From Macrostomum hystrix (lineage: Eukaryota > Animalia > Platyhelminthes), in the NCBI GenBank assembly GCA_950097015.1, contig CATNEN010000012.1:2170001-2234000 (forward strand): a stretch of 64,000 nt of DNA, in the 5' to 3' direction. Of this stretch, positions 4,761 to 45,900 are shown piece after piece. Both the position numbers and the translations under genes were made by a program. Under the pieces are notes generated by a model. It was not told where the DNA came from. It did not search any database and worked only from the letters and a program-made list of their open reading frames with translations. Every line of letters begins with the position of its first letter. The first letter of the stretch is position 1.

Positions 4761-7700
4761 CTGAAATTCGGAGAAATTTTGTTGAAATAAAGTTTCCCAA
4801 TATAAATTTGGAAATATAATTAAATAAATGAGTATTAATAAGTTTGTTAAAAATACACAATCAACACGATGAGTTTAAATTTAAACAGTTTCAAGACGGG
4901 TAATTAAGCAACGATTGCATAATAGTAATAGTAAATATAAATATTCACTAAGGTTTCAGAAGTAGTAATGGCAGTAGTAGTGGTATTAGTAGAATTAGAA
5001 TTTCTGAGATTAGTTACAGTAGTATATAATAATATAGTAATGTTAGTAGTATTAGTAGTGTTAGTAGTAGTATATAGTAGTAGAAGTATTAGTACTCAAA
5101 GTGCTGGGGGTAGTATTCGTACTAAAAATATAATTCTCTCCACAAAGCAATCCCAATAGGAGTCATAGTCATCAATCTAAGTTGTGCGTCAAAATGAAAG
5201 CGCAGGTGCGTATTAGTAGGTGGTGGGTGATCTAGTGCTAAAAGTGTGAAAATTGATCAGTCGAATCACTCAGAACACTAGATAACTGAGTGAGGCATAT
5301 TATAAAATGCAGCATTGTACGAGCCCCTAGAAGTGTGGCAACAGGCAGCCAGCAACCTGACAAGTCCCACGCTTGGCTGTCGGCCCCTGAAGACAGCTGA
5401 CTGGACAAAACTAGCGGCGACGGAGGCGGCCTGGGCGGACGGGGCAGCGGCGGCAGCGGCGTCGACCTGTTGCCGTTGGCGCCGAAGCCAGCTGACTGCG
5501 GCGGCGAGTTTGTGCGCCTTCTAACAGAGCTGATTTAGTTGAGCATTTGAGCGGACAGAGGGGAGAGGGAAAGAGGGAGTTGTGAAATTCGTGCTCGCAT
5601 TATTTTGGGCATGTGAATTTGCGATTTGTAACTTTGCATGCAAAATGCCTAAAAATTCATCATGCACAATGAAATAGTTAAAAAGTGCTGTATACGCCGT
5701 AAAACACTTTGATAAATACCCATTTGACATCATTTCTACTGCGGCTCTGCATTATTAGGTAAGTAAAACACTTTTTTGGTTCTAGAAAATGAGGTGGTGG
5801 ATGTAGGAGGATAGAAAATGGGGTGGTGGATGCAGGAGGATAGAGAAATGACGTGGTGGATGTAGGAGGATAGAGAAATGAGGGGGTGGATGTAGGAGGA
5901 TAGAGAAATGAGGGGTGGATGTAGGAGGATAGAGAAATGGGGGGTGGGTGCAGGAGGATAGAAAAAATAAGTGGTGGATGCAGGAGGATAGAGAAATGAG
6001 GGGGTGGATGTAGGAGGATAGAAAATGGGGTGGTGGATGCAGGAGGATAGAGAAATGAGGGGTGGATGTAGGAGGATAGAGAAATGGGGTGGTGGATGCA
6101 GGAGGATAGAGAAATGAGGGGGTGGATGTAGGAGGATAGAGAAATGGGGGGTGGGTGCAGGAGGATAGAAAAAATGGGTGGTGGATGCAGGAGGATAGAG
6201 AAATGAAGAGGTGGGTGCAGGAGGATAGAAAAAATGGGTGGTGAATGCAGGAGGATAGTGAAATGGGGTGGTGGATTCAGGTGGATAAAGAATTGAGATG
6301 GTCGTTGCAAGAGGGCAGAGAAATGAGGTGGTGCATGGGTACAGAAGGGTAGAGAAAAGGAGGTTGTTGGTGAAGGAGGATGGCGAAATTAGGTGTTTGG
6401 TGCAGGAGAATAAAGAAATGAGGGGTTGGGTGCAGGTAGTTTGAAAAACAGCCTCGTGTGCCCCTCTGCTATTAGGCAAGAAAAAACTTTGGAAATACAT
6501 TGAGAGATTTAAACACGCTATATTTAAGCTATATTTAAGCATCTCGTAAAGTGTTGCAGCATTAAAATAGCCCATAGCCGAATCAAATGACAACATATTT
6601 ATTTGAACTTTTAATACCATCAACCAACTGAAACCAAAGGTCTAATCTTTCGTGTTGAAACGAGTTGTGTACATTCAATGTACATTTTAGTGCCTAGAAT
6701 ATAAATTTAGTGCATAATAGTAATAAAAACTGTCTATAGTTACTGACTGAAGCTTACAGCTTTTGACGAAAAATCCTGGCTCATTGCTTAGGCAATTTCA
6801 GTTCTGCAAGCGCGTTTCAGTAATTTAATTTTTACTAAGATTAATAATGACCTCTATAGGTTGAAGCAATAAGAATTAGGGAAGTAGGTTGTCAAAACAT
6901 AGCAACGTATGTTTACCTTAGCAACCGCGGAAACTACCACTAGCCTATGTTAACAATTCTTTTCACAACCGAAATCCTTGCAACAGGAAACTCCAAATAA
7001 CCGAAATAAAACTTTGAATGTCATTTTCACTAAAATAGTGACGAGGTACATGAAATTTACCTGCAGCACTCAGTGAACTCAAGCCAAGCTACAATAACTG
7101 CTCCCTATCGTCCAGGCTAGTAACCTGGGGCCCGCCGAGTGAGGATATTCTCATGATGAGATCATTCCTGATCGCCGGTTCAGCACGATGGCATTACGTG
7201 TTATCAGTAAAAATTACACAAAATGAGTTTTTTCGATTCAGTGAAATCATGCAAGTGAGACACGTGAATGCAATATTTATTTTTACATGCGAATGTAAAA
7301 ATATGGAACTCATTGAAATACATTCCATATAATACCATCCGAAATACTTAAAGTAAATACAGACATCTTTGTAAGATTAGCGGAAGCTCAGAAAATAAAT
7401 TCGTTTGAAAATGAATGAATTTGGGGCGTCTGGTGGAGTGAAATGGCTGGGCTGCGGATTGAGGTGGCTGGGCTGCGGATTGAGGTGGCTGGGCTGCGGA
7501 TTGAGGTGGCTGGGCTGCGGATTGAGGTGGCTGGGCTGCGGATTGAGGTGGCTGGGCTGCGGATTGAGGTGGCTGGGCTGCGGATTGAGGTGGCTGGGCT
7601 ACGGATTGAGGTGGCTGGGCTGCGGATTGAGGTGGCTGGGCTGCGGATTGAGGTGGCTGGGCTGCGGATTGAGGTGGCTGGGCTGCAGAGTGATTGGTGG

Positions 7701-10700: not shown

Positions 10701-13700
10701 ACCCGGCGGCGCCGTTAGCCTTGAAGCCGCCGGCGCCGTTGACGATGCCTTCGCGATCACCCCCGGAGGCCAGGATTCTCTTGCGTCGCTGCGCCTTGCG
10801 CTTGCACAGCCAGCAGAGCACAATTAGGCAGGCGAGCGCGGCCAGGAACAGCAGAATGCCTAGCACAATGAGAGCCACCTCGGCCGAGCTGAGAGTGCCG
10901 CCGCTAGACGATACTATCGGCGTGGCCGTTGTCGCCGCTGTGCCGTTGACGCCGGCGTCCGACGGCGAGCGAACCCCATCGAGAGTGGCGCCCAGCGAGG
11001 CGAAGTAGCTGACGATTTCGGATCGCTTGGCCTCAATTCTGGCACGCAGGTCGGCCTGAGTGAGCAATGCACCTGTGCTAGGGCTGTACGCGTACAGGTA
11101 GGCATCTGTCTTTGTGGGGTCTACCTGAAAATGAGGAGAGGAATCGTATACTTAAAAGAACTAAAATACTCGATAACAATAACTCCTATCCTCTCCTAGA
11201 CCCCCACCTCACTCCTGCCAATTGAAACATCCACCTCACTCCTGCTAATTAGAACATCCACCTCACTCCTGCCAATCGGAACACCCACCTCACTCCTGCT
11301 AATTAGAACATCCACCTCACTCCTGCTAATTAGAACACCCGCCTCACTCCTGCCAATTGGAACATCCACCTCACTCCTGCTAATTAGAACATCCACCTCA
11401 CTCCTGCCAATCGGAACACCCACCTCACTCCTGCTAATTAGAACATCCACCTCACTCCTGCTAATTAGAACACCCGCCTCACTCCTGCCAATTGGAACAT
11501 CCACCTCACTCCTGCCAATCGGAACACCCGCCTCACTCCTGCTAATTAGAACACCCGCCTCACTCCTGCCAATTGGAACATCCACCTCACTCCTGCCAAT
11601 CGGAACACCCACCTCACTCCTGCCAATTGGAACACCCGCCTCACTCCTGCTAATTAGAACACCCGCCTCACTCCTCCAAATTGGAACATCCACCTCACTC
11701 CTGCCAATCATAACACCCACCTCACACCTGCCAATCATAACACCCATCTCATTCCTGATCATCCAATAACACTGCAAAACCGGCCCATCTGAGCTTACTT
11801 TCGTTGAGCTGCCTGTTCCAGTCACTGCGCTCTCAAACTTTTCAATCCGTACGTCGGCACCCAGCAGAGCGGACAGGTTGGCCCGAATCTGGCTCTGGTA
11901 CAAGCCGAACTTGTCCGGCGCAATGCCGGCAGTCAGGACCAGTCGGCTGGCATCGGCCAGCAGACTGATGATCAGGTCCAGGCTGGTTGTGAAGACACCG
12001 TCGGTAGCCTGAGCACGCACTATTAAAGTGGCCACCGATGAAAAGGTGACCTTTGTGCGCACCTGTCCGCTAATTGAGTCCGCATAGAAGCTGTCGGTGC
12101 CATTGGTCAGCGAATAGCGAATTGTCGAATTCTCATCCTTATCAGTTGCCTGCAGTGAGGTTGTCGCGTTGTTTTTTTGCTTAAAGCTCAAGCTGCCATA
12201 TTCCAAAGCTCACATTTCGAGCTTAAGATTGTCGCCAATTTCTCCTCCTTCTGCCCCTTCCCTTTCGCGGGTTAGTTATCTGCACTTTTCTTTTCCTAAC
12301 CTCTCCCTGCTCGGTGATTGGTCATTCTAATATTGTTCTCTCTCTCGTGTCCAACCCTCGTGTTTCAAGCCGAAAAGACGGTCTCTTACTGCGTAGACTC
12401 AATTTATTGCATAAGTAACAAAAAAGGTCACCCAAATTGGCCATCTACCTGCAAGGTATATACCAGGCTGCTAACTGGCGCGCTGAAAGCCAACCCGACC
12501 AAATACGGACTTGACACCGCGAATATCGGCGGATTGTCGTTAACGTCGCCAACAGACAGCGCCAGTGTTGTCGTATCGCTGGTTGGAAGGGCCACAGCCG
12601 CGCGACGTCTTCGACCGCTGGCTGGCGCTGAGGCGGGCAGTGTTGCCTTGACAACCAGGCTGTAGGCGGGCACTGTCTCTCTGTCAAGGCTGTTTCGCAA
12701 GTACAGCTGACCGCTAGCGCTGTCCAGATCGAAAACAGTTGGACATGAGGCGATTGTGCAGGACTCTAGCGAGTATTGCACGGTGCGGCCCATGGCCTCA
12801 TCCGTGGTGCCAAAGTCGTAGATCAGAGTCCGACCACCGCCGCCGCTGTTCTCTGGCCAGAACAGGCTGAGGCTAGTCTGGGGAAACACAGCTTTGGTTG
12901 GCGCCACCAACCACAGCTGAAGGCTGGCCGAGGCCGAGTTGCCGACTGAATCCCTGGCAGTCACTGGCAGAGTGTAGACTCTCGTTGGCAGATCGCCGAG
13001 CAGACGACTCGTGCTCACTCTGCCCTGGCTATTGATTGAGAAGGCGCTGTTCAAGTTTCCAGTGGATGCCAGGGTATAGTTGAAGGCCGCCCCAGAGACT
13101 CCGGCAGGGATGTCAAACACTGGCGTGCCCGGAGCCAGGTTGTCAGGCAGGCTGGCATTGTAGAATGCCGAGTCGAATCTTGGAATCGAGCGGTCCAATC
13201 GCTGCACAGTGACAGACAGTGTGGCTGTGGATGACAGGGGCGGATTACCCAGATCAAAGGCCACGAGGATGAGGCTGTAGGCACTCTTGATGGCGAAGTC
13301 CAGTTTGCCCAGAGTCCTCAGCGACACATTCCCGGCTCCTGTGAGAACAGTTTTTTACAGGATAATTGTACTACTAATTAGTAGCACATTTAGTATGCGT
13401 CAAAAAGGAACGGTGCGAAAAAAAACTCAGGTGAACGCAAGCGTGAAAAAAGCAGTGGATGCACAATTTGTGAATACGGAAAATACAAGGACCACTAGAA
13501 GAAGAAGGATGGGACACTTCGTTTCTTGGAAATTTTTTTAAAGACAGATTTTCACGAAAAATGCTGCATCGGATCTGCTTCCGATAAAAAGTTATACATT
13601 TTTTAATCAGAAAAACGTGACAAGTTTCTATCTCGCTTTTGCATTTTTTAGTAAAAATCTGCCTTTAATACATTTTCCAAGAAAAGAAGTGTCCCTTCTT

Positions 13701-19700: not shown

Positions 19701-22700
19701 CGTTGACATCGGCCAGGTGGACAACGACGCCAACCAGGGTGCGACTGAGGGTTGTCGGATGGCCCCGGCTGTTGAATGCGGCAACTGTGAAGGAGTAGGT
19801 TTGCCCGCCGGTTGACGACTCGCGATCCAGTACGGCGCCTGGCGCGACAGTAAGCCGGCCAGTGACAGCGTTGATGACAAATGGAAGGCTGGGTGAGCCA
19901 GCCGCAGGCGGTACGATAGAATACTCGATGAAGCTATTGTTGCCGACGTCACGATCGGTAGCTTGAATGCTGGGCATCTGCGGGTGGATGGAAATCGGGT
20001 TAAATCACACAATCCTTTCTTCGCGCAGGCTAAGTCATGCAGAAGTACACCCTGCACTTACAAAGTACACCTCAGTATTGCTAGGCGAGTTTTCAGGCAC
20101 GGAGCCTGTGTACTGTGCGGCTGTGAACACAGGCGTGTTGTCGTTCACATCCAGTATGGTGAGACGCAGTTCTGCGGTTGTCTGCGGGATTAACGGGCCG
20201 ATTGTCTGTGGCCCATTCCGATGCACGAGGAAATAAGCCTACTGTGCTCACCGGAGTATCCTTATACTTCCCTGTGTACATTCCGACACTTGCCTACGTA
20301 CATTCCGATACTTTCATGTGTAAATTTTAATACTTGACTTGCCTGTTCACAATCTCTATACTCCTCTGTGTACACTCCCTGTACTCCTCTGTGTACATTC
20401 CCTGTACTCCTCTGTGTACACTCCCTATACTCCTCTGTGTACACTCCCTATACTCCTCTGTGTACACTCCCTATACTCCTCTGTGTACACTCCCTATACT
20501 CCTCTGTGTACACTCCCTATACTCCTCTGTGTACATTCCCTATACTCCTCTGTGTACACTCCCTATACTCCTCTGTGTACACTCCCTATACTCCTCTGTG
20601 TACATTCCCTATACTCCTCTGTGTACATTCCCTATACTCCTCTGTGTACATTCCCTATACTCCTCTGTGTACACTCCCTGTACTCCTCTGTGTACATTCC
20701 CTATACTCCTCTGTGTACATTTTTGCTAGAGAACTCTCGTTGACTCTGAGTGACGAGTGACTCTCGTTGTGCAATGCAACCCCAATATGCCCCACCGAAC
20801 AATCTAGTTTTTTTGTTTTGTGAAGCATACATGCCTTAAAACAAATTGTTTTCCTCGAATAAACAGAACTGTTGAATACTGTTGAGTGATGACAGTGTTA
20901 TTTTCAAACAGCAAAAATTTTTTGAAATTTGACCGTTTAATAAAAATTAAATAAGATATTTGATTTCGAAGTTGCTGGAAAAAAATAATTTAATTCAGTG
21001 AGAACAGAAAAAGAAGAAAATTTTAATTCCGTGGCCTCTTACGTTCTGTCAATTGATTAGCAAAGATTGTGTAAAGAATGATGATAATATCACATGATAC
21101 TCGTAGTTGGTATAACTTCAATGAGATCAGCTTCAGCACCAATCAACTGAACTCACATAGCGAGGTGACACTCCCATGTCCGAGGCCACAATGGTGAATG
21201 TCAGCTGTGCGTTTGTCTCCCTGTCGACTGTGCCGTTTAGTGTGACCGTGCCATTCTGCGAATCGTTCAGTCAGCGCATTATTGACAGGTAAAAACTGTG
21301 TTGATTCAGACAGGCAGACAATTGATCAAACTACCAATAAAACTATCAATCACGATTTAAATCAACAGGATTTGAATCGAAATGTCAATTTAACCGCTTA
21401 TCAAAATTTTAATCAAACTGGTAATGAAACTGCCAATCACACTGTCAATCACACCATCAATCAAACCATTAATCAAACTATCCATCACACCATCAATCAC
21501 AGCATCAATCACAGCATCAATCACACCGTCAATCACACCATCAATCACAGCATCAATCACACCGTCAATCAAACCACCAATCAAACCATCAATCAACCCA
21601 TCAATCAAACCATCAATCAAACCACCAATCAAACCATTAATCAAACCATCAATCAAACCATTAATCACACCGTCAATCAAAACTGCCAATATGAAAACCA
21701 AACATTTAAAAAGCTAATCTAAAAATCCATGAAAATGACAATCAAAGCTGTAAATACAACAGTAAAACACAAAGCATTGTTTATGTGCGGCTCACCTCGC
21801 TAATTGCCAGCAGGTATCTGAGGTTGCTAGGCGAGCCAACAGAGTAGACAACCTTGCCGTTGAGTCCCGTGTCCGCATCATCCGCCCACACCTGGCCAAT
21901 TATCTGGCCGGTCACGCCAGGTGTTTGGTCGTTCTCAGCTACGCTGAACTGATACAGCGGACTAGTGAACACCGGACTGTTGTTGTTACTGTCCATTACT
22001 ATTATGCTGACAAAGGTCTGCAATTTCAGTAACAACAAGGCGTAAAAGTAAACAAAGCTTACCTTGAAACAAAATGTTTCTTATTAACTGACGCAAAGTA
22101 CATACAGAGGTGTTGAACACTCCGTCCGTCAGCTGGATGCTGAGGTTGAATCGAGCTCTGGCAGACCTAGACAGCTGCCTGTTGAGCTGCAGACTGCCGC
22201 CCGAAGTCAGCCGAAATGTGTCTGGCGTTTAGGAAGGGTCTGGATGTTATAAACATGTGTTATAAAGGTCCGAGTGATTTCAAGGTCAAATCAGATTTCA
22301 AGGTCAAATCAGATTTCAAGGTCAAATCTGATTTCAAGGTCAAATCTAATTTCAAGGTTAAATCTGATTTCAAGGTCAAATCTGATTTCAAGGTCAAATC
22401 TGATTTCAAGGTCAAATCAGATTTCAAGGTCAAATCTGATTTCAAGGTCAAATCTAATTTCAAGGTTAAATCTGATTTTAAGGTCAAATCTGATTTCAAG
22501 GTCAAATCAGATTTCAAGGTCAAATCTGATTCCAAAATCAATTCTGATTTCAAGGAAAATTTATTATTTCAAAGTCAATGTTATTTCCAAATCAACGTCA
22601 ATCGAATTCCAAAGTCAACCTGATTTCAAGGTCACTAGGATGTCAAGGTCAAGGTCAATGTGATTTCAAGGCTCATGTTATCAGCTTTTGAGTTTTCTAC

Positions 22701-24886
22701 AGTTGCAAGGTCAACTTTTTGGGATTTTAAAGGCTTTGAAGGTCATTCATGGGAATAATTTCTGGGTCATTACAGTATTCAGCAAAGCTTCAAAAGCCGT
22801 TCTCATTAAAACAGCTAACCGTTGAAGTTTCCTTCGGCGCCGAGACTATAGAAAAACGCATTCGATGAGGCCAAGTCGTCATCCATAATGTCGAATCCGG
22901 GCACAACCACAGAGCCGACCGGGGTGCTTTCAGCCACCTGGAACTGTCGATTCACCGTGCCGGCTGCGAAACGCGGCGGCGAGTCATTGATGTCGCTGAT
23001 AAGGATCGTTAGCGAGCCGCTAGAGCTCAAAGGGCTGGGCGTACCGGAGTCGGTCGCCATGACAACCAATGTGACGACGCCGTTCCCGGCTGAGTCATAG
23101 CTGAGACCTGGCGCTTCTCGATCTGTGACACGCGCCACGGTCAGCTGGAAGCCGTTCACAATGCTGAACCAGCCGCGCTCGTTTCCAGCGGCAATCGTCA
23201 GGCTGACGTTGGCGTTCTGGCCCGCGTCCAAGTCCTGCACCGTCAGGTTGAAGGCCCAGCCGACGCTGCTGGAGTTCTCCGGAATGCGCCAGCTGGCCGG
23301 CAAGTTGGTGATGTTTGGCGCGTGGTTGTTGACGTCGGTGATGTCAACAGTTACCAGGGCGACAGCCTGTCCAAGGAGGCGATGAGTTAGATTTCAGAGG
23401 AACGCCAAACAAAAAATTGGTTAAATTATGATTATCGAATTTTGAGTCGTACAGAATTCCCAGCTGTATCCACGCAAGTGACATTGAAGGTCGCGCGGCT
23501 GATCTCCAGCCTAGAAAAAGTCGTCAACGTGGACACAACTCCGCTGCTTGAGTCGACGGCGAAGCTTCCGCTGGATCCGGACGGAGGGCCGAGTCGGTAG
23601 ACGAGCCGCGAAGGCCCGCCGTTGACGCCTCCGCCGTCGGCTGTGTCTGGATCGGTGGCCGAAACTCGGCCGATGACGACAGGCGGCGAAAGTTCGGCTA
23701 CGGCGAAGTTGTATGAAGCAGGGACGAACGTTGGCGGGTTGTCGTTGACGTCGCCAATGCGAACAATTAAATTGTAGTTGCTGGCATAGGTGCCGTCGCT
23801 TGCTTGGATCTGATTGGTTGGGGGTGGGGTGGGTTTCGTTTTGAATCGATTGGTTGGGGTGGGGTGGGTGTCGCTTTGAATGGATTGGTTGGAGTTGGGG
23901 TGGGTGTCGCTTTGAATCGATTGGTTGGTGTTGGGGTGGGTGTCGCTTTGAATCGATTGGTTGGGGTTGGGGTGGGTGTCGCTTTGAATCGATTGGTTGG
24001 GGTTGGGGTGGGTGTGGTTAGATGTAGAGCAACGGAGTGGAGCGAAAACTGCCCATTATACTACTTATACGCGTAACACTGCATAGTAGTGGACCATGCG
24101 CATGAAGGCAATAATACGGTAATCCAACTGATACCAAGTACAAACCTGTTTTAAACCAACGGTCACTCACAGATTCAAAGATCAAAGAAACTCGTCGACT
24201 ACAATTAGGGCACTCGTCATGGGAAAGGGGCCTGTGACCTTACTTAAAGCTATGAATTGATATTAGCAGTACTGCTACCGACTTACAACAAGGTTATACC
24301 GGTACGCCATGGCTGCCATTGTATCATAGTCCAGTGGCGAATTCAGCAGGACCTGCAGCGCGCTGCCTGGGCCTTGTTGAAGTCGGAACTTTCCAGCCGA
24401 GCTGTCAGCAATCAGGCTGTAGGTTGGCTGCAGATCGAGGCGGTGCGTGAGTTAGTGTCATTTCCACTGAACTTAGTTATCTTCCCAATGTCCAGCTTAC
24501 CACACTAGCCGTGACATCCGGATCTACAGCCAGAGCAGTGGCCACCGAGGCATTTATGGAAGCATTTTCATGCACCAGGCAGTCACCGCCGGGGAACTGA
24601 AATCTCGGCGCATTGTCGTTGATGTCAGTCAGGGGGACGCTGATGAGCAAGGAGGCTGAGTAGGTCGGCTCAGCGGCGTTGACGGCAACGATTACTGCGG
24701 ACACTTCGCTGCCAGTCTCGCGGTCCAGAGTGCGAGGGAGTGCCATTAGTAGGCCCTGTTGGGTTTAATTTCTCAACGATATAGGAAACACTATCACCAT
24801 TGCGCTCGCTATATTGGTAACAGGTAACAAAGATATTTAAAGATTTACGAGTACAACCAGAGACACTGCATAGATTTACAGCCACA

Positions 24887-24943
<57 letters not shown>

Positions 24944-27900
24944 GACTACTACCACTACTCACAGTATCGGCTGAGATATTGAACTTGTCTGCACCAGCCG
25001 CCAGTCTGTAAAGCACTCCGACATCAGGCGCGCCAGAATTAATTCTGGCGTCAAAGTTGGCCACAAGAAGCAGTCTGGTGTCGTTTTCCAGCACCGCTGA
25101 CACATTTGGCGCTGACAGAGCTGGCACTTTAGCGTAGAAGTCAAGATGCCGTACAACCATCAGTGAGATATTTGCCGAGCTCTTTAATTCGGCGGCGTCG
25201 GTTGCGAAGACCGTGACCGTGTGGTTGTTGCCTATGGACGGAGCGGCACCGGCCAGACTCAGCCAGCCGGTGGTCGAGTTGACTCGAGCGAAGCCGCCAG
25301 TTCCGATGGAATAAGTGATTGGCTGAGGCCGAGTAGCAGGATAATCGGGATCGATGGCGGACACGAAGCCGAACCGCCAGCCGGCAGTGGCGTTGTCAGG
25401 CGCCATGAAGCTGTACTGAGCCGGGTCGAATTTCGGCGGTGTATCGTCAGCGTTCAGCACCGCCACATAGACTGGCGCGGTTGCCGAGCGAGGCATCGCT
25501 CCCGAATCCGTTGCTATGACAACAAATGAGGACGACTGAGCAGTCTCGTAGTCCAGCGCCAGTTTCAGGCGGAGAGCGCCGCTGAACGGATCGATTTCAA
25601 AGTGCGCATCGGTCGGGGTCTGCAGACGGTAGGTCAACCGGCCGTTGACCGACGGATAGTCGGCATCGGTTGCTAGGACGGTTGCTATGACATTACCAAC
25701 CGGTGTAGTCTCGTTCACGGGTGTTGTGTACACTGCCGGATTGAACACGGGTGAGTGAGCGTTGGTGGCGTTCACGTACACGGTTACGTTCGCCGAGGCG
25801 GAGAGCGATGGCGAGCCCTGGTCGCGCGCTGTCACTCCCAGGCGGTGAATGGACTTCCTGCTGATGTTGAGCCCGGCTGTCAGGCTGAGCTCGCCGCTGC
25901 GGAAGTCCAATCTGAAGTTCGGGGTGGGTGGCATAGCGGTTTAACGTGCCTGAGCTCGATTCCGCGGCGAGGCCACATTCATTTGGGGCGCAGTTGCGGA
26001 GAGAAGGCTTTGGGATGTCAAAGGTACAGTGAAAGGTTCCACTGCCTGACGATGAGAAAGTCAGGCCAGATGTACAAGCCTGTGTGTGTATGCCTGCGTA
26101 CAGTATTTGAGTCAGGATGTGCTTAGGAGTCAGTGGAATGGGCAGCATTGCCTCCTCGCTGACTGCGGGTCTAGTGTCATCAAAAATAATTGCGCCAATG
26201 CTCACAGCCCTCCTGCAAATATGATGAATGCTAACCTGAAGTTCTCTTCGCCGCCAGACAGGAAGTACACCAGCTGGGCGTTCACGCCCGCGTCCGCATC
26301 GGTGGCGACCACCTTACCGATCACGGTGCCCACCGGGGCGAGCTCGTCAGCGAAGAAGACGTACTCAGTGTTGCCAAACAGAGGCGAATTGTCGTTGACG
26401 TCCCCGACGGTAACATTCACTACGCAGTAGTCGAAGAAGCGACCGTCGGTAACTTGCAGTCGGACAGAGTAGAAGTCACGCGCTTCCCGATCCAACGGGC
26501 CATTCGTCATCAGGCTGGCCGACTTGCTGTTATAGTCTGCCGTCAGAGTGAAGTTGGCAGCGTCTATGGCCAGATTCGCCAGACTGAAATTGAAGCCGGT
26601 GGCTGGGACTGTGTCCGGATCGCTAGCGAAGACTCGGACAACCTGCTGACCGGCTGGCAGGTTCTCCAGAACCGTGGCCGAGTAGGCGCTTGGGCTGAAG
26701 GTCACCGGCTTGTCATTGGTGTCGATGACGCGAATGCGCAGAGTCAGCAAGCTGGTCTGCGCCGGGCTGCCCTGATCCGACGCTGCCACAATCAGCAGCT
26801 GCTCCTGCTGCTTCTGATAGTCGATCTCGTTACTATTGGCAACCGTGATGCTGCCGGTCAGGGCATTGATGGAGAATGCGTTGCTTCCGCTTGAGAGGAT
26901 GGCGAAAGTGACGTTGGCATTCTGCCCAGCGTCGCGGTCCGTGGCATTCAACTGGGCAAGGAGGACAGGCATTTAAGAGATCGAAAGAGACCTAGATTAA
27001 GTTATTGATACTGCTGGACCAAGCAAATTAGTTGCAGTAATTTATTTCTAGGGCCTTAAGCTGTGCCCTGCACCACGTCATTTTCTCCAGCCTGCTCCGT
27101 ACCAGACCGTATCCAGTCTGTTCTTTACCATCATTTTCCCCAGCCTGCTCTGTACCCACAACCTCATTTTCCCCAGCCTGCTCTGTGCCCACCACCTCAT
27201 TTTATCCAGCCTGCTCTGTACCCACAACCTCATTTTATCCAGCCTGCTCTGTAGCCACCACCTCATTTTCTCCAGCCTACTCTGTACCCACAACCTCATT
27301 TTCTCCAGCTTGCTCATTACCCAACTCATTTTCTCCAGCCTGCTCATTACCCAACTCATTTTCTCCAGCCTGCTCATTACCCAACTCATTTTCTCCAGCC
27401 TGCTCTTTACCCAACTCATTTTCTCCAGCCTGCTCTTTACCCAACTCATTTTCTCCAGCCTGCTCATTACCCAACTCATTTTCTCCAGCCTGCTCTGTAC
27501 CCACCACCTCATTTTCTCCAGCCTGCTGCAGCTCCCATGCCAACCTGTTTTCTCAACCTGCAGCACTTGCTAAAACCTCCCGAGTCTCCTCACCTTCAAA
27601 ACTTGACTGCTATTCGGGGCTGCCTCCATCACACTGACAGCAGGGATTGGTGAAAACATTGGCGCATTGTCATTGACGTCAGCAACTTCCACGCGCACAC
27701 TGGCAGTGCTGACGTGGATAGAATCGTTAGCTTGTACGGTGAACGCTACAGGATTTGTTAGCAAGCTCTCCCGATCGATGACTGACCGAGTGACTATCAG
27801 GCCGTCTGTCTGTACCGAGAACAAATCTGCAAGATTGATTCGCTTTAGTTGTAAATTTGCTATACATACTACTGGAAAGTAGGATATCAGCTGGAAAGCC

Positions 27901-39900: not shown

Positions 39901-42900
39901 GGTGGAGAGAAAACTCAGGTTGCAAAAAACACTATTCCAAGCTTGACTTGATTGTCAAGCCAAATGATGCCTTGAAACTGCGAGAGCTGATGTCTAGGGA
40001 TAAAGTTGTGGTCAAAATGATTAAATTGGATTAACTGAAACTGCTAAATTGTACTGCACTGTAACTTACCTGTAACTTATAGTCCATTAATAAACTGGCT
40101 ATAAGTTAGCCAGGAGTTCAGCCAGGAGGCAATTCTGCCCATTCCGCTGACTCCTGAGCACACACGCACACAGATACCGTAAGCAGGCACACACTCACAC
40201 TTGTGTGTACATCAGCCCTGACTTTCTCATCGACAGGCAGTTTAAAATTTAAATGTGCCTTGGAGGTTGGAGGTAAATTGCACGACAAGCTCCCAAAGCC
40301 TTCTCTACGTGGCTGCGCCCCAAATGAATATGGCCTCGCCGCGGAATCGAGCTCAGGGACCTCGGTCAATAAGTAAGATTTTAGCTCGATTACTTAAAAA
40401 TCAAATATTCTATGGTCATGAGTGAGGGGTATTCCATGGACTTCTCTAGAATATAAAATCCGATTGCTTATTTTATTGACAGTTATTGGGCTCATTCTTT
40501 GCCAGGAACGCCTAGTCTATGGTTTAAAGTGCTATAATTCCAGGACCATCAAATCAAATGTAGCCGACTATCGCTCAAGATAAAAGTTGAGACCGTTGCC
40601 ATGGAAACCAGCCCACCGGGCTATCCTTGACTCGAGATTTCCCCAGTCTTTAAAACGCTCACAGGCAGCTGTGGAGAATTGGGAATAAACATTGGGAGAG
40701 AAACAGAATGAGCGAGTGTGAGCCTGACAGGTGAGCAAACATCCCTCACTCTGCTCAGGCCTTCTCACTCTAGCTCAGGCAAAATCCGGCCGTCATCAAC
40801 GGGAAAAGCAAAGAAAGCAATAGGGTGGGGGGAGATCGAAGCGAGCATTGTGTGGAACAAGTCCAATCCACATTTCTCCCCTCTATCCGAAAGAGCACTC
40901 TAGGATTTTAACAAAAAGTATATGTGCTAATTTCCGTTCCATTTGCAACATTGATTTCCCTTAATTTCTACTCACCATGGCACTCAAATATTGTATAACT
41001 AAGTGCTGCGAGTGTTAGCAGACTCGAATCCCGTATTCTGAATCTAAAACCCCGCATTCTGAATCTAAAATCCCGTATTCTGAATCTAAAATCCCGTATC
41101 CTGAATCTGAAATCCCCTATCCTGAATCTAAAATCCCGTATCCTGAATCTAAAATCCCGTATCCTGAATCTAAAATCCCGTATTCTGAATCTAAAATCCC
41201 GTATTCTGAATCTAAAATCCCGTATTCTGAATCTAAAATCCCGTATCCTGAATCTGAAATCCCGTATTCTGAATCTAAAATCCCGTATCCTGAATCTGAA
41301 ATCCCCTATCCTGAATCTAAAATCCCGTATCCTGAATCTAAAATCCCGTATCCTGAATCTAAAATCCCGTATTCTGAATCTAAAATCCCGTATCCTGAAT
41401 CTGAAATCCCCTATCCTGAATCTAAAATCCCGTATCCTGAATCTAAAATCCCGTATTCTGAATCTAAAATCCCGTATCCTGAATCTGAAATCCCCTATCC
41501 TGAATCTAAAATCCCCTATCCTGAATCTAAAATCCCCTATCCTGAATCTAAAATCCCGTATTCTGAATCTAAAATCCCGTATTCTGAATCTAAAATCCCG
41601 TATTCTGAATCTAAAATCCCGTATTCTGAATCTAAAATCCCGTATTCTGAATCTAAAATCCCGTATTCTGAATCTAAAATCCCGTATTCTGAATCTAAAA
41701 TCCCGTATTCTGAATCTAAAATCCCGTATTCTGAATCTAAAATCCAGTATTCTGAATCTAAAATCCCGTATTCTGAATCTAAAATCCCGTATTCTGAATC
41801 TAAAATCCCGTATTCTGAATCTAAAATCCCGTATTCTGAATCTAAAATCCCGTATTCTGAATCTAAAATCCCCTATCCTGAATCTAAAATCCCGTATTCT
41901 GAATCTAAAATCCCGTATTCTGAATCTAAAATCCCGTATTCTGAATCTAAAATCCCCTATCCTGAATCTAAAATCCCGTATTCTGAATCTAAAATCCCGT
42001 ATTCTGAATCTAAAATCCCGTATCCTGAATCTGAAATCCCGTATTCTGAATCTAAAATCCCGTATTCTGAATCTAAAATCCCGTATTCTGAATCTAAAAT
42101 CCCGTATTCTGAATCTAAAATCCCGTATTCTGAATCTAAAATCCCGTATTCTGAATCTAAAATCCCGTATTCTGAATCTAAAATCCCGTATTCTGAATCT
42201 AAAATCCCGTATTCTGAATCTAAAATCCCGTATTCTGAATCTAAAATCCCGTATCATGAATCTAAAATCCCGTATTCTGAATCTAAAATCCCGTATTCTG
42301 AATCTAAAATCCCGTATTCTGAATCTAAAATCCCGTATTCTGAATCTAAAATCCCGTATTCTGAATCTAAAATCCCGTATTCTGAATCTAAAATCCCGTA
42401 TTCTGAATCTAAAATCCCGTATTCTGAATCTAAAATCCCGTATTCTGAATCTAAAATCCCGTATTCTGAATCTAAAATCCCGTATTCTGAATCTAAAATC
42501 CCGTATTCTGAATCTAAAATCCCGTATTCTGAATCTAAAATCCCGTATCCTGAATCTAAAATCCCGTATTCTGAATCTAAAATCCCGTATCCTGAATCTG
42601 AAATCCCGTATTCTGAATCTAAAATCCCCTATCCTGAATCTAAAATCTCGTATTCTGAATCTAAAATCCCGTATCCTGAATCTGAAATCCCGTATCCTGA
42701 ATCTGAAATCCCGTATTCTGAATCTAAAATCTCGTATTCTGAATCTAAAATCCCGTATTCTGAATCTAAAATCCCGTATTCTGAATCTAAAATCCCGTAT
42801 TCTGAATCTAAAATCCCGTATTCTGAATCTAAAATCCCGTATCCTGAATCTAAAATCCCGTATTCTGAATCTAAAATCCCGTATTCTGAATCTAAAATCC

Positions 42901-45900
42901 CGTATTCTGAATCTAAAATCCCGTATCCTGAATCTGAAATCCCGTATCCTGAATCTAAAATCCCGTATTCTGAATCTAAAATCCCGTATTCTGAATCTAA
43001 AATCCCGTATTCTGAATCTAAAATCCCGTATCCTGAATCTAAAATCCAGTATTCTGAATCTAAAATCCCGTATCCTGAATCTAAAATCCCGTATTCTGAA
43101 TCTAAAATCCAGTATTCTGAATCTAAAATCCCGTATTCTGAATCTAAAATCCCGTATTCTGAATCTAAAATCCCGTATTCTGAATCTAAAATCCCGTATT
43201 CTGAATCTAAAATCCCGTATTCTGAATCTAAAATCCCCTATCCTGAATCTAAAATCCCGTATTCTGAATCTAAAATCCCGTATTCTGAATCTAAAATCCC
43301 GTATTCTGAATCTAAAATCCCCTATCCTGAATCTAAAATCCCGTATTCTGAATCTAAAATCCCGTATTCTGAATCTAAAATCCCGTATTCTGAATCTAAA
43401 ATCCCCTATCCTGAATCTAAAATCCCGTATTCTGAATCTAAAATCCCGTATTCTGAATCTAAAATCCCGTATTCTGAATCTAAAATCCCCTATCCTGAAT
43501 CTAAAATCCCGTATCCTGAATCTAAAATCCCCGATTCTGAATGAAAAATCTTAAATCTAAAATCTGAATCTGAATTATCGATTTCTGAGGTCGAGATCCC
43601 AATCCCGAATTCGAATCCCAAAACTGACTTTCATATCCATGACTTAAATCGTAAACTGATTGTATACCTATAGTCTCTTTATCTAGCTCATATTTACCGT
43701 TCATAATTATCCAACCAAACAACTGAATTCCCGAAAGTACACAGTTTTCAGTTCATGGGGCCGTGGTGCACTCACAATTAGGCGCAAGCTTTGCACAGTC
43801 TCCCTGTCCAGCAGGCCGGAATCGCGCACTGTGACGACTCCGGAGGCGGCGTCGATTTGAAAAGCGCCACTAGCGTCAATTAGGATGAACTCTTGCTTGG
43901 AGTTCTGCGAATGCATTTGAGCCGATATGTATAGAAAATCATGAAAACTAGACAGCAACATCTTTATAAAAATTGGTAATGAAAGCTTTTTCTAATCGCT
44001 GACCAGATCCAGATCTGAAGCGCTCAGGCGAGTCACGTAGGTGCCGACAGCCGAATTCTCAGCGATGCTGGCGTTTATAGCTGGCGGCGAAATCACTGGC
44101 CGATTGTCATTCTTGTCCAGCACTGTGACAATTACGGTCGCCAGGGCTATACGCGTGTCCGGCTTGTCCGTTTGGTAGGCCTACGGGCGGATGAAATGAT
44201 TTTAGGGTCACCCGAGACTCACTGGGGTAACCCGAGACTCACTGGGGTAACCCGAGACTCACTGGGGTCACCAGAGACTCACTGGGGTAACCCGAGACTC
44301 ACTGGGGTCACCTGCAGAGACTCACTAGGGTCACCAGAGACTCACTGGGGTCACCCGAGACTCACTGGGGTCACCCGAGACTCACTGGGGTCACCAGAGA
44401 CTCACTGGGGTCACCAGAGACTCACTGGGGTAACCCGAGACTCACTGGGGTCACCAGAGACTCACTGGGGTCACCCGAGACTCACTGGGGTCACCCGAGA
44501 CTCACTGGGGTCACCAGAGACTCACTAGGGTCACCAGAGACTCACTGGGGTCACCCGAGACTCACTAGGGTCACCAGAGACTCACTGGGGTCACCCGAGA
44601 CTCACTGGGGTCACCAGAGACTCACTAGGGTCACCAGAGACTCACTGGGGTCACCCGAGACTCACTAGGGTCACCAGAGACTCACTGGGGTAACCCGAGA
44701 CTCACTGGGGTCACCAGAGACTCACTGGGGTCACCAGAGACTCACTGGGGTAACCCGAGACTCACTGGGGTCACCAGAGACTCACTGAGGTCACCAGAGA
44801 CTCACTGAGGTCATCTATACTCTAACTCACGCGTACTACACTGTATCACACCTGAACTACACTGTATCACACCTGAGCTACACTGTATCACACCTGAACT
44901 ACACTGTATCACACCTGAACTTCACTGTATCACACCTGAGCTACACTGTATCACACCTGAACTACACTGTATCACACCTGAACTACACTGTATCACACCT
45001 GAACTACACTGTATCACACCTGAACTACACTGTATCAGTCTCCTCCATCGTGACAGCGCCTTACAAAAAGAACTTTCCTGATGAGAAGGAGGGTACAGAG
45101 GGTGGGGGTGGTTTCACTGTCAACTTTCTCACATCTCAAACTTATTTTATTGGCACTTCGGAGGAGGAGCATTTGGCTGAGTGACACTGAGTGATCTAGT
45201 TGAAGACAGTTTTTCCACTCATTCCTGCCTGAGTCAGCTGCAGGCCACTACAGTATCGCCCATTTCACTCATTGCTGGTCACAGCTGACTCAGAGCACCA
45301 GAGGTCTGTGTCAATTTCGCATTCTCTTTCAGCTCAGACACTAAAACTCCTGTCCCCCGGGAGAGGCAAGCAAACATATCATTGCAATATTGTATCTAGG
45401 CTTGAGTTTCTTTGCATACTATACAATGAGAAGGAAATTTTCACAAGAGACAGAAGGCTGGCAAACACCCAGCTAGTACAACTGACAGGCTTTGAAGGAC
45501 AGAAAAAATGACACATGATAGACTTAAACTTATACAGTAACCTACAGTAACATACAGTAACCTACAGTAACCTACAGTAACCTACAGTAACCTATACAGT
45601 AACCTACAGTAACCTACAGTAACCGACAGTAACCTACAGTAACCTACAGTAACCTACAGTAACCTACAGTAACCTATACAGTAACCTACAGTAACCTACA
45701 GTAACCTATACAGTAACCTACAGTAACCTACAGTAACCAACAGTAACCTACAGTAACCTACAGTAACCTATAGTAGCCTATACAGTAACCTACAGTAACC
45801 TACAGTCACCTACAGTAACCTACAGTAACCTACAGTAACCTACAGTAACCTATAGTAGCCTATACAGTAACCTTGCTGAGAATTTTACGTTAAACTTAAC

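What the first reader, a model, noticed from the sequence alone, without database searches (positions are those of the whole stretch)
25912..26244. A spliceosomal intron apparently created by a SINE insertion (retroposon acting as an 'introner')
Seen: intron 18 (324 nt) consists of a tRNA-derived SINE-like element plus one copy of a 9-bp direct repeat. On the coding strand the exon ends GAACTTCAG|gttagc and the intron ends ...cacccc GAACTTCAG|A. Splicing removes the element and one repeat copy exactly, restoring EENFR-LDFRSGE in mid-EC domain. The duplicated CAG supplies the 3' splice site. The antisense of the G-rich SINE head supplies the pyrimidine tract, and the antisense tail supplies GT. 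None of the other 36 introns shows such a match. A second family member sits passively in intron 8 (40110-40360). Known: TSD-dependent intron gain is documented mainly for DNA-transposon introners; SINE-made introns are rarely reported. Inference: recent intron gain, and possibly an intron-generating SINE family.
Basis: partly seen in the sequence, partly recalled or inferred. Interest (0 to 1): 0.85.

Follow-up and report, generated by a model that had tools for sequence, protein, structure and literature searches.

The report
SINE insertion spliced out as intron
A short jumping-DNA element (a SINE) landed inside a coding exon of a giant cadherin gene of a Macrostomum flatworm and is now cut out of the RNA exactly as an intron; this is a clean animal example of a known but rarely documented way to gain an intron, and the insertion is old rather than recent.

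Summary
The intron is 25912-26235 (324 nt, minus-strand gene). It consists of one full-length SINE (25921-26235, antisense to the gene) plus one copy of a perfect 9-bp target-site duplication.

- **Element ends.** Both ends of the family consensus abut the two repeat copies exactly.
- **Splicing.** Transcript contigs from three runs of one study skip exactly these 324 nt, with GT..AG ends. The fourth run is compatible.
- **Gain, not loss.** Three paralogous units in the same genome, and the M. lignano counterpart of that paralogue, are uninterrupted at this codon. The two flanking intron positions are shared with the paralogue.

- **Not recent.** This copy is 13.7% from the consensus, against 1-5% for young copies, and no close sister copy exists.
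- **The GT does not come from the family tail.** The antisense tail is (AAT)n. The GT most likely arose by one A>G change, possibly inside a 12-bp duplication.

The family has about 5,600 copies. None of about 45 other copies I tested splits an open reading frame.

The scan has flagged the same phenomenon at six or more other places in this genome, three of them followed up. I could not verify those. The true orthologue in a sister species was not found.

The parts
26236..26951 (-). It encodes cadherin repeats and the N-terminal half of the split EC domain.
   Evidence: RNA contig joints 26951/27594 and 25911/26236; Pfam PF00028 E=3.7e-35.
26236..26244 (-). Exonic copy of the target-site duplication (GAACTTCAG on the coding strand).
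   Evidence: It lies directly after the end of the SINE tail on the element's strand.
25912..26235 (-). The intron: 324 nt, phase 2, GT..AG ends, 5' splice site GTTAGC.
   Evidence: Joint 25911->26236 skipping 324 nt, ends CT..AC on the plus strand, 9 ambiguous letters, in runs X1, X2 and X3. The neighbouring introns use GTGAGT or GTAAGT.
25921..26235 (+). Full-length but diverged SINE copy (315 nt), antisense to the gene. It has a head with A- and B-box-like motifs, a 21-nt deletion in the head, and a degenerate (ATT)n tail.
   Evidence: Own-genome search, alignment to 29 copies, 13.7% divergence from the consensus.
25912..25920 (-). Intronic copy of the target-site duplication. Its last three bases, CAG, are the 3' splice site.
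25921..25955 (-). Antisense SINE head acting as the 3' splice region: a C-rich pyrimidine tract (ccgctatgccacccacccc) preceded by a TTAAAC branch-point-like motif.
   Evidence: Sequence. The family consensus in antisense reads GTTAACCGCTCTGCCACCGACCCCCC. The function is inferred.
24963..25911 (-). It encodes the C-terminal half of the split EC domain and further cadherin repeats.
   Evidence: RNA contigs; Pfam PF00028 E=6.6e-27; donor context.
40119..40366 (-). Second copy of the same SINE family, truncated at both ends (consensus positions 42-297, 87% identity), in sense orientation inside an ordinary intron.
   Evidence: BLAST of the consensus against the window; sequence.

Best explanation
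A SINE of an abundant family retroposed, antisense, into the middle of a long cadherin exon of about 1,665 nt. The family has a consensus of about 362 nt, a head with Pol III A- and B-box-like motifs, an (ATT)n tail and about 5,600 copies. The insertion duplicated 9 bp of target sequence, or possibly 12 bp.

The spliceosome now removes the element plus one duplication copy exactly. The 3' splice site is the CAG of the duplicated target. It is preceded by the C-rich antisense SINE head as pyrimidine tract and by a TTAAC-like branch motif that is also present in the family consensus. The 5' splice site, CAG|GTTAGC, sits at the junction of the exonic duplication copy and the antisense tail. It is not part of the family consensus, so it arose by mutation.

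The simplest route to the GT is one A>G change in a 12-bp duplication, GAACTTCAGATT, turning CAG|ATT into CAG|GTT. The mRNA is restored codon for codon.

Shown: the anatomy, the splicing, the empty paralogous sites and the old age of the copy. Inferred: the order of events at the 5' splice site, the roles of branch point and pyrimidine tract, and LINE-mediated insertion.
For: 1. The intron equals the SINE plus one duplication copy, and the family consensus ends abut the two copies.

2. Other full-length copies carry their own duplications of 9-17 bp at the same boundaries. This shows ordinary retroposition.

3. Transcript contigs of X1, X2 and X3 join 25911 to 26236. The same contigs skip five other GT..AG introns. 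The X4 contig ends 9 letters into the repeat, which is compatible with the spliced form.

4. Read-through meets a stop after 10 codons. Excision restores open frames of 242 and 347 codons and a complete EC domain.

5. The C5 paralogue carries the two exons as one 656-codon open frame. It is colinear residue for residue across the site and has the same flanking intron positions. Two further C5 units, and the M. lignano locus L056, are also uninterrupted there.

6. The 5' splice site GTTAGC is atypical beside its GTGAGT and GTAAGT neighbours, as expected for a secondarily made site.

7. The duplication is still perfect, while equally diverged copies of the family have lost theirs.
Against: - No orthologue of this gene from a sister species, and no population sample, was obtained. 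The empty state is shown only in paralogues that are 46-54% identical.
- The runs are Logan contigs of unrecorded library type from a single study. Contigs cannot show unspliced precursors or rare isoforms.
- A 9-bp duplication is at the short end for this family. The 12-bp reading needs one mismatch.
- How the gene worked before a GT existed is unknown.
Confidence: 0.9

Rival explanations
1. Insertion polymorphism rather than splicing. The sequenced reference individual carries a SINE that disrupts the gene, the animals used for RNA lack it, and so their transcripts simply reflect an empty site.
For: The 9 shared letters make a spliced RNA and an empty-site RNA indistinguishable. All four runs come from one study, and contigs cannot show precursors.
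Against: The copy is old: 13.7% from the consensus, with private deletions and no sister copy above 82% identity. That is hard to reconcile with a segregating null allele. Canonical GT and AG sit exactly at the boundaries although the family tail has no GT.
Confidence: 0.04
2. An older intron already existed at this position, and the SINE inserted into it and later replaced all of its sequence.
For: SINE copies of this family do sit inside ordinary introns (window 40119-40366; L049 and L055).
Against: No non-SINE base is left in the intron. The duplication includes the last 9 coding bases of the exon. Four homologous sites lack any intron while the flanking intron positions are conserved.
Confidence: 0.03
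3. The SINE family is a dedicated 'introner' whose consensus carries both splice sites, so that any exonic copy is spliced at once.
For: The antisense head consensus offers a branch-like motif plus a pyrimidine tract next to the target. Other notes of this scan report further SINE-made introns in this genome.
Against: The antisense tail (AAT)n has no GT. None of about 45 other copies splits an ORF. The 5' splice site here is weak and private to this copy.
Confidence: 0.03

Closest known systems
[quoted passage not shown] 2007, PMC2394776)
   Same: A SINE inserted in coding sequence is removed as a spliceosomal intron. It is a single-locus event.
   Different: That case is in a plant. Here the host is an animal, a flatworm, and the evidence includes an exact target-site duplication, RNA support, and paralogous empty sites.
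Alu 'intronization' in human 3' UTRs (Sela et al. 2007, PMC2394776)
   Same: A SINE inserted into an exon activates splice sites, and in one case mutations within the element made the 5' splice site. Antisense SINE sequence serves as the pyrimidine tract.
   Different: Those introns lie in untranslated last exons and are alternative (retained or spliced). This one lies in coding sequence and must be removed to keep the frame.
Introners: TE families that generate many introns (Gozashti et al. 2022, PMC9860276; 2025, PMC12130899)
   Same: The intron equals the element plus a target-site duplication that supplies splice-site bases.
   Different: Introners are defined by many similar introns in one genome. 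They are mostly DNA transposons, with about 5% non-LTR retroelements. [quoted passage not shown] Recurrence for this family was not shown here, and the element does not carry a 5' splice site.
Intron gain by duplication of an AGGT-containing segment (cited in PMC2394776; potato example in PMC4974935)
   Same: A short direct repeat provides both splice junctions, so that excision restores the original coding sequence.
   Different: Here the repeat is a retroposition target-site duplication around a mobile element, not a tandem genomic duplication.

Membership tests
SINE (short non-autonomous Pol III retroposon) | Short, non-coding, very high copy number | tested here: met
   The consensus is about 362 nt. 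A conserved 18-mer with at most 1 mismatch occurs 2,802 + 2,798 times in the genome, and the reversed control occurs 0 times.
SINE (short non-autonomous Pol III retroposon) | Variable target-site duplications directly flanking full-length copies | tested here: met
   Unrelated duplications of 9-17 bp at the GGGG head and after the tail in L002, L003, L005, L007, L008, L012, L013, L016, L023, L025 and L027.
SINE (short non-autonomous Pol III retroposon) | Internal Pol III A and B boxes, tRNA-related head | tested here: inconclusive
   A-box-like TGGCAGAGCGG and B-box-like GTTCGATTCC are seen by eye. ARAGORN and the Rfam tRNA model do not recognise the head, either in this copy or in young copies.
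SINE (short non-autonomous Pol III retroposon) | Simple-repeat 3' tail, and a 3' end shared with a partner LINE | tested here: inconclusive
   The (ATT)n tail is shown. A LINE partner was not searched for.
Transposon-created spliceosomal intron | Intron boundaries equal the element plus one target-site duplication, and excision restores the reading frame | tested here: met
Transposon-created spliceosomal intron | Spliced in vivo at those boundaries | tested here: met
   Joint 25911->26236 in contigs of three runs. Caveat: these are contigs, from one study, with the library type not on record.
Transposon-created spliceosomal intron | Homologous site intron-less in relatives | tested here: inconclusive
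   Met for three paralogous units and for the M. lignano counterpart of the paralogue. The true orthologue was not found.
Introner family (sensu Gozashti et al.) | Many introns of one genome derive from the same element family | tested here: inconclusive
   0 of about 45 other copies. Two intronic SINE copies at RasGAP loci lie inside ordinary introns. The scan notes that list other cases were not verified.
Introner family (sensu Gozashti et al.) | Splice signals supplied by the element and its duplication at the time of insertion | tested here: not met
   The 3' side is supplied (antisense head plus duplicated CAG). The 5' GT is absent from the consensus antisense tail (AAT)n.
Intronization of former coding sequence | The intron is derived from sequence that used to be exon | tested here: not met
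   The paralogue aligns residue for residue across the junction with nothing missing. The intron is a repeat-family member.

The most novel reading that the evidence does not exclude
This SINE family of about 5,600 copies may be a recurrent intron maker in Macrostomum, a retroposon 'half-introner'. Inserted antisense, its head delivers a ready-made branch motif and pyrimidine tract next to the target. Any exonic target holding AG, or AG|GT or AG|AT one mutation away, can then be spliced out exactly. Several coding introns of this genome would have arisen this way, as six other notes of this scan suggest. That would be the first retroposon-driven, multi-locus intron gain described in an animal.
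Probability: 0.35. Interest if true: 0.75.

Novelty: new member of a known kind. Interest (0 to 1): 0.55.

Why it matters
Cases where the origin of a spliceosomal intron can be read base by base are few, and in animal coding sequence they are very rare. This one shows each ingredient:
- the target duplication gives the AG;
- the antisense SINE head gives the pyrimidine tract;
- a private mutation gives the GT.

It also comes with paralogous empty sites and RNA support.

If the same family has done this repeatedly in this genome, Macrostomum would become an animal model for transposon-driven intron gain. Surveys so far found such gain among animals in only two groups (PMC9860276).

Tried and rejected
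**Search for the orthologue**
- An exhaustive representative search with the exon 19 peptide ranked giant cadherins by summed repeat scores. All hits were at most 41% identical.
- P0005 is not colinear with the two exons.
- Three homologous-protein searches were run: exon 19, the C5 paralogue, and alignment A1. The only Macrostomum hit was P0164, which is the counterpart of the C5 paralogue (67% identical to it, 57% to this gene).
Exons were searched apart or as separate rows of an alignment.

**tRNA origin of the head**
- ARAGORN and Rfam gave nothing.

**Verifying the scan's 'RASA1' SINE intron**
- Eight RasGAP loci were located, and none has an SH2 hit nearby.
- The SINE copies at two of these loci lie inside ordinary, larger introns.

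**Genome-wide census**
- The pattern search lists only the first 100 of 5,600 places, so no census was possible.

**Organism identity from the mitochondrion**
- No COX1 match was found in the assembly. The Macrostomum identity rests on the 67% hit to M. lignano and on other notes.

**False leads from the window scan**
- Two apparent extra hits (44410-44789 and 45542-45871) are minisatellites.

Full report
**Observation.** On the minus strand the upstream exon ends ...GAAGAGAACTTCAG and is followed by gttagc. The intron ends ...cacccacccc gaacttcag and the next exon starts ATTGGAC. Counting on the ruler, the intron is 25912-26235 (324 nt). The exonic repeat copy is 26236-26244 and the intronic copy is 25912-25920, so the finding's range is the intron plus the exonic copy. 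Joining the exons in silico gives ...LVYFLSGGEENF-R-LDFRSGELSL.... In-frame read-through stops after 10 codons. Both exon peptides are cadherin repeats, and the junction lies in the middle of one EC domain.

**The element.** A search of the window's own genome (220 Mb, 42 contigs) with the stretch gave 2,853 first-look candidates. Forty were scored, at 74-82% identity.

I aligned 30 copies with their flanks. This defines a family of about 362 nt with these features:
- It begins GGGGGGTCGGTGGCAGAGCGG.
- It carries A-box-like and B-box-like motifs.
- It ends ...CCCTCCTGCA followed by (ATT)n.

The copy in the intron starts with GGGGTGGGTGGCATAGCGG directly after CTGAAGTTC. It ends with a degenerate tail (...AATATGATGAATGCTAAC) directly before the second CTGAAGTTC.

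Other full-length copies carry unrelated direct repeats of 9-17 bp, mostly 12-15 bp, at the same two boundaries. That is the signature of retroposition.

A conserved 18-mer of the family occurs 5,600 times in the genome with at most one mismatch, and its reversed control occurs 0 times.

ARAGORN and Rfam do not recognise a tRNA in this copy or in young copies. 'tRNA-derived' therefore rests only on the two promoter-box-like motifs.

**Splicing.** Four runs of one study hold the stretch. Their library type is not on record. Their contigs skip six intervals of the 5.7-kb stretch, each with CT..AC ends on the plus strand, which is GT..AG for the minus-strand gene. They are therefore transcript contigs.
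- The joint 25911->26236 (324 nt skipped, 9 letters fitting either side) is present in X1, X2 and X3.
- The X4 contig ends 9 letters into the repeat, with 9 further letters unplaced. That fits the spliced form.
- The other five joints share only 0-2 letters across their boundaries.

Depth inside the intron is very high, but it comes from other copies of the family. Contigs cannot show precursors or intron retention.

**Gain rather than loss.** I searched the genome in six frames with each exon peptide separately. A paralogue on contig C5 matches the exon 18 peptide at 1974435-1975142 (54% identity) and the exon 19 peptide at 1975149-1976093 (46% identity), both inside one open frame of 656 codons.
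- The alignment is colinear residue for residue across the junction...SGGQDKF-L-INYQTG... against ...SGGEENF-R-LDFRSG....
- The paralogue's open frame is bounded by an acceptor and a donor at the same positions as the start of exon 18 and the end of exon 19.
- Two further units on C5 (1979811-1980941 and 1988274-1989407) are also uninterrupted at the site.
- The only Macrostomum protein found, M. lignano BOX15_Mlig004619g2, is the counterpart of the C5 paralogue: 67% identical to it against 57% to this gene. Its genomic locus is uninterrupted at the site too.

The flanking introns therefore predate the gene duplication, and the SINE intron is specific to this gene.

I did not find the true orthologue in a sister species. 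The date of the insertion relative to speciation remains open.

**Age.** The copy differs from the family consensus at 13.7% of aligned positions. Young copies differ at 1-5%. Its best relative in the genome is 82% identical. It has a private 21-nt deletion in the head, and its tail has decayed. The differences are private, so they accumulated in place, and the insertion is old. Copies of similar divergence have mostly lost recognisable duplications, yet this one is perfect. One copy is coding sequence and the other carries the acceptor.

**Where the splice signals come from.**
- **3' side.** The acceptor CAG is the end of the duplicated target. It is preceded by the antisense head ccgctatgccacccacccc and by a TTAAAC motif. 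The consensus antisense head reads GTTAACCGCTCTGCCACCGACCCCCC. A branch-like motif plus a pyrimidine tract is therefore a family property. Their function is inferred.
- **5' side.** The donor is CAG|GTTAGC, whereas all neighbouring introns use GTGAGT or GTAAGT. The family tail in antisense is (AAT)n and has no GT.
- **A possible 12-bp duplication.** The three bases next to the 9-bp repeat are AAT on one side and AAC on the other. A 12-bp duplication with one mismatch fits the family's usual duplication length better than 9 bp. On the coding strand that mismatch is ATT against GTT. A single A>G change would then have created the donor.

This step is inferred. How the gene functioned before a GT existed is unknown.

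Only this copy restores a long frame, with 242 and 347 codons. In the window, no other GT..AG interval combines a boundary repeat of 8 nt or more with open flanks, apart from minisatellites.

Other notes of this scan describe six further candidate SINE-made or transposon-made introns in the same genome. Three were followed up: a cubilin-like gene, a RasGAP gene and an enzyme gene. I tried to find the RasGAP case and failed. Whether those cases involve this same family is unknown.

**Comparison with what is known.** The rice catalase A intron and Alu insertions in human 3' UTRs are the documented SINE-made introns (PMC2394776). Introner families are mostly DNA transposons, with about 5% non-LTR retroelements (PMC12130899). 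[quoted passage not shown] Neither survey mentions SINEs or flatworms. This locus is a new, well-documented member of a known but rare kind. It is not a recent gain and not a demonstrated introner.

Noticed in passing
window 45540-45880 and 44300-44860: Two long minisatellites inside the cadherin gene region: about 33 copies of a 10-mer (GGTTACTGTA, minus strand) and about 27 copies of a 20-mer (GGTGACCCCAGTGAGTCTCT-like). Both contain GT and AG dinucleotides and mimic repeat-bounded introns in a naive scan.
   Followed up: partly
window 24878-24963: A (GTA)n microsatellite fills much of the 207-nt intron that follows the exon ending at 24963. Read laying skipped it as a repeat.
   Followed up: no
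window 7569-7673, 11370-11727, 22339-22500: In-frame tandem repeats (periods of 21, 27 and 18 nt) inside long open frames on either strand. They may be repetitive coding sequence.
   Followed up: no
G000:C5:1974210-1994974 (L032, L033, L038-L040): A paralogous cadherin locus with at least three tandem units homologous to exons 18-19 of the window gene. Two of the units are nearly identical to each other, which suggests a recent internal duplication.
   Followed up: partly
L056:13829-13844 (M. lignano NIVC01002323.1): The M. lignano gene model BOX15_Mlig004619g2 ends in an odd C-terminus. The homology continues in another frame, so a frameshift in the assembly or the gene truncates the model.
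   Followed up: partly
window 25874-26255 (read laying depth): Word depth in the RNA contigs is 100-200 times higher over the SINE than over the exons. Members of this SINE family are therefore abundant in the transcriptome, either as own transcripts or embedded in other RNAs.
   Followed up: no
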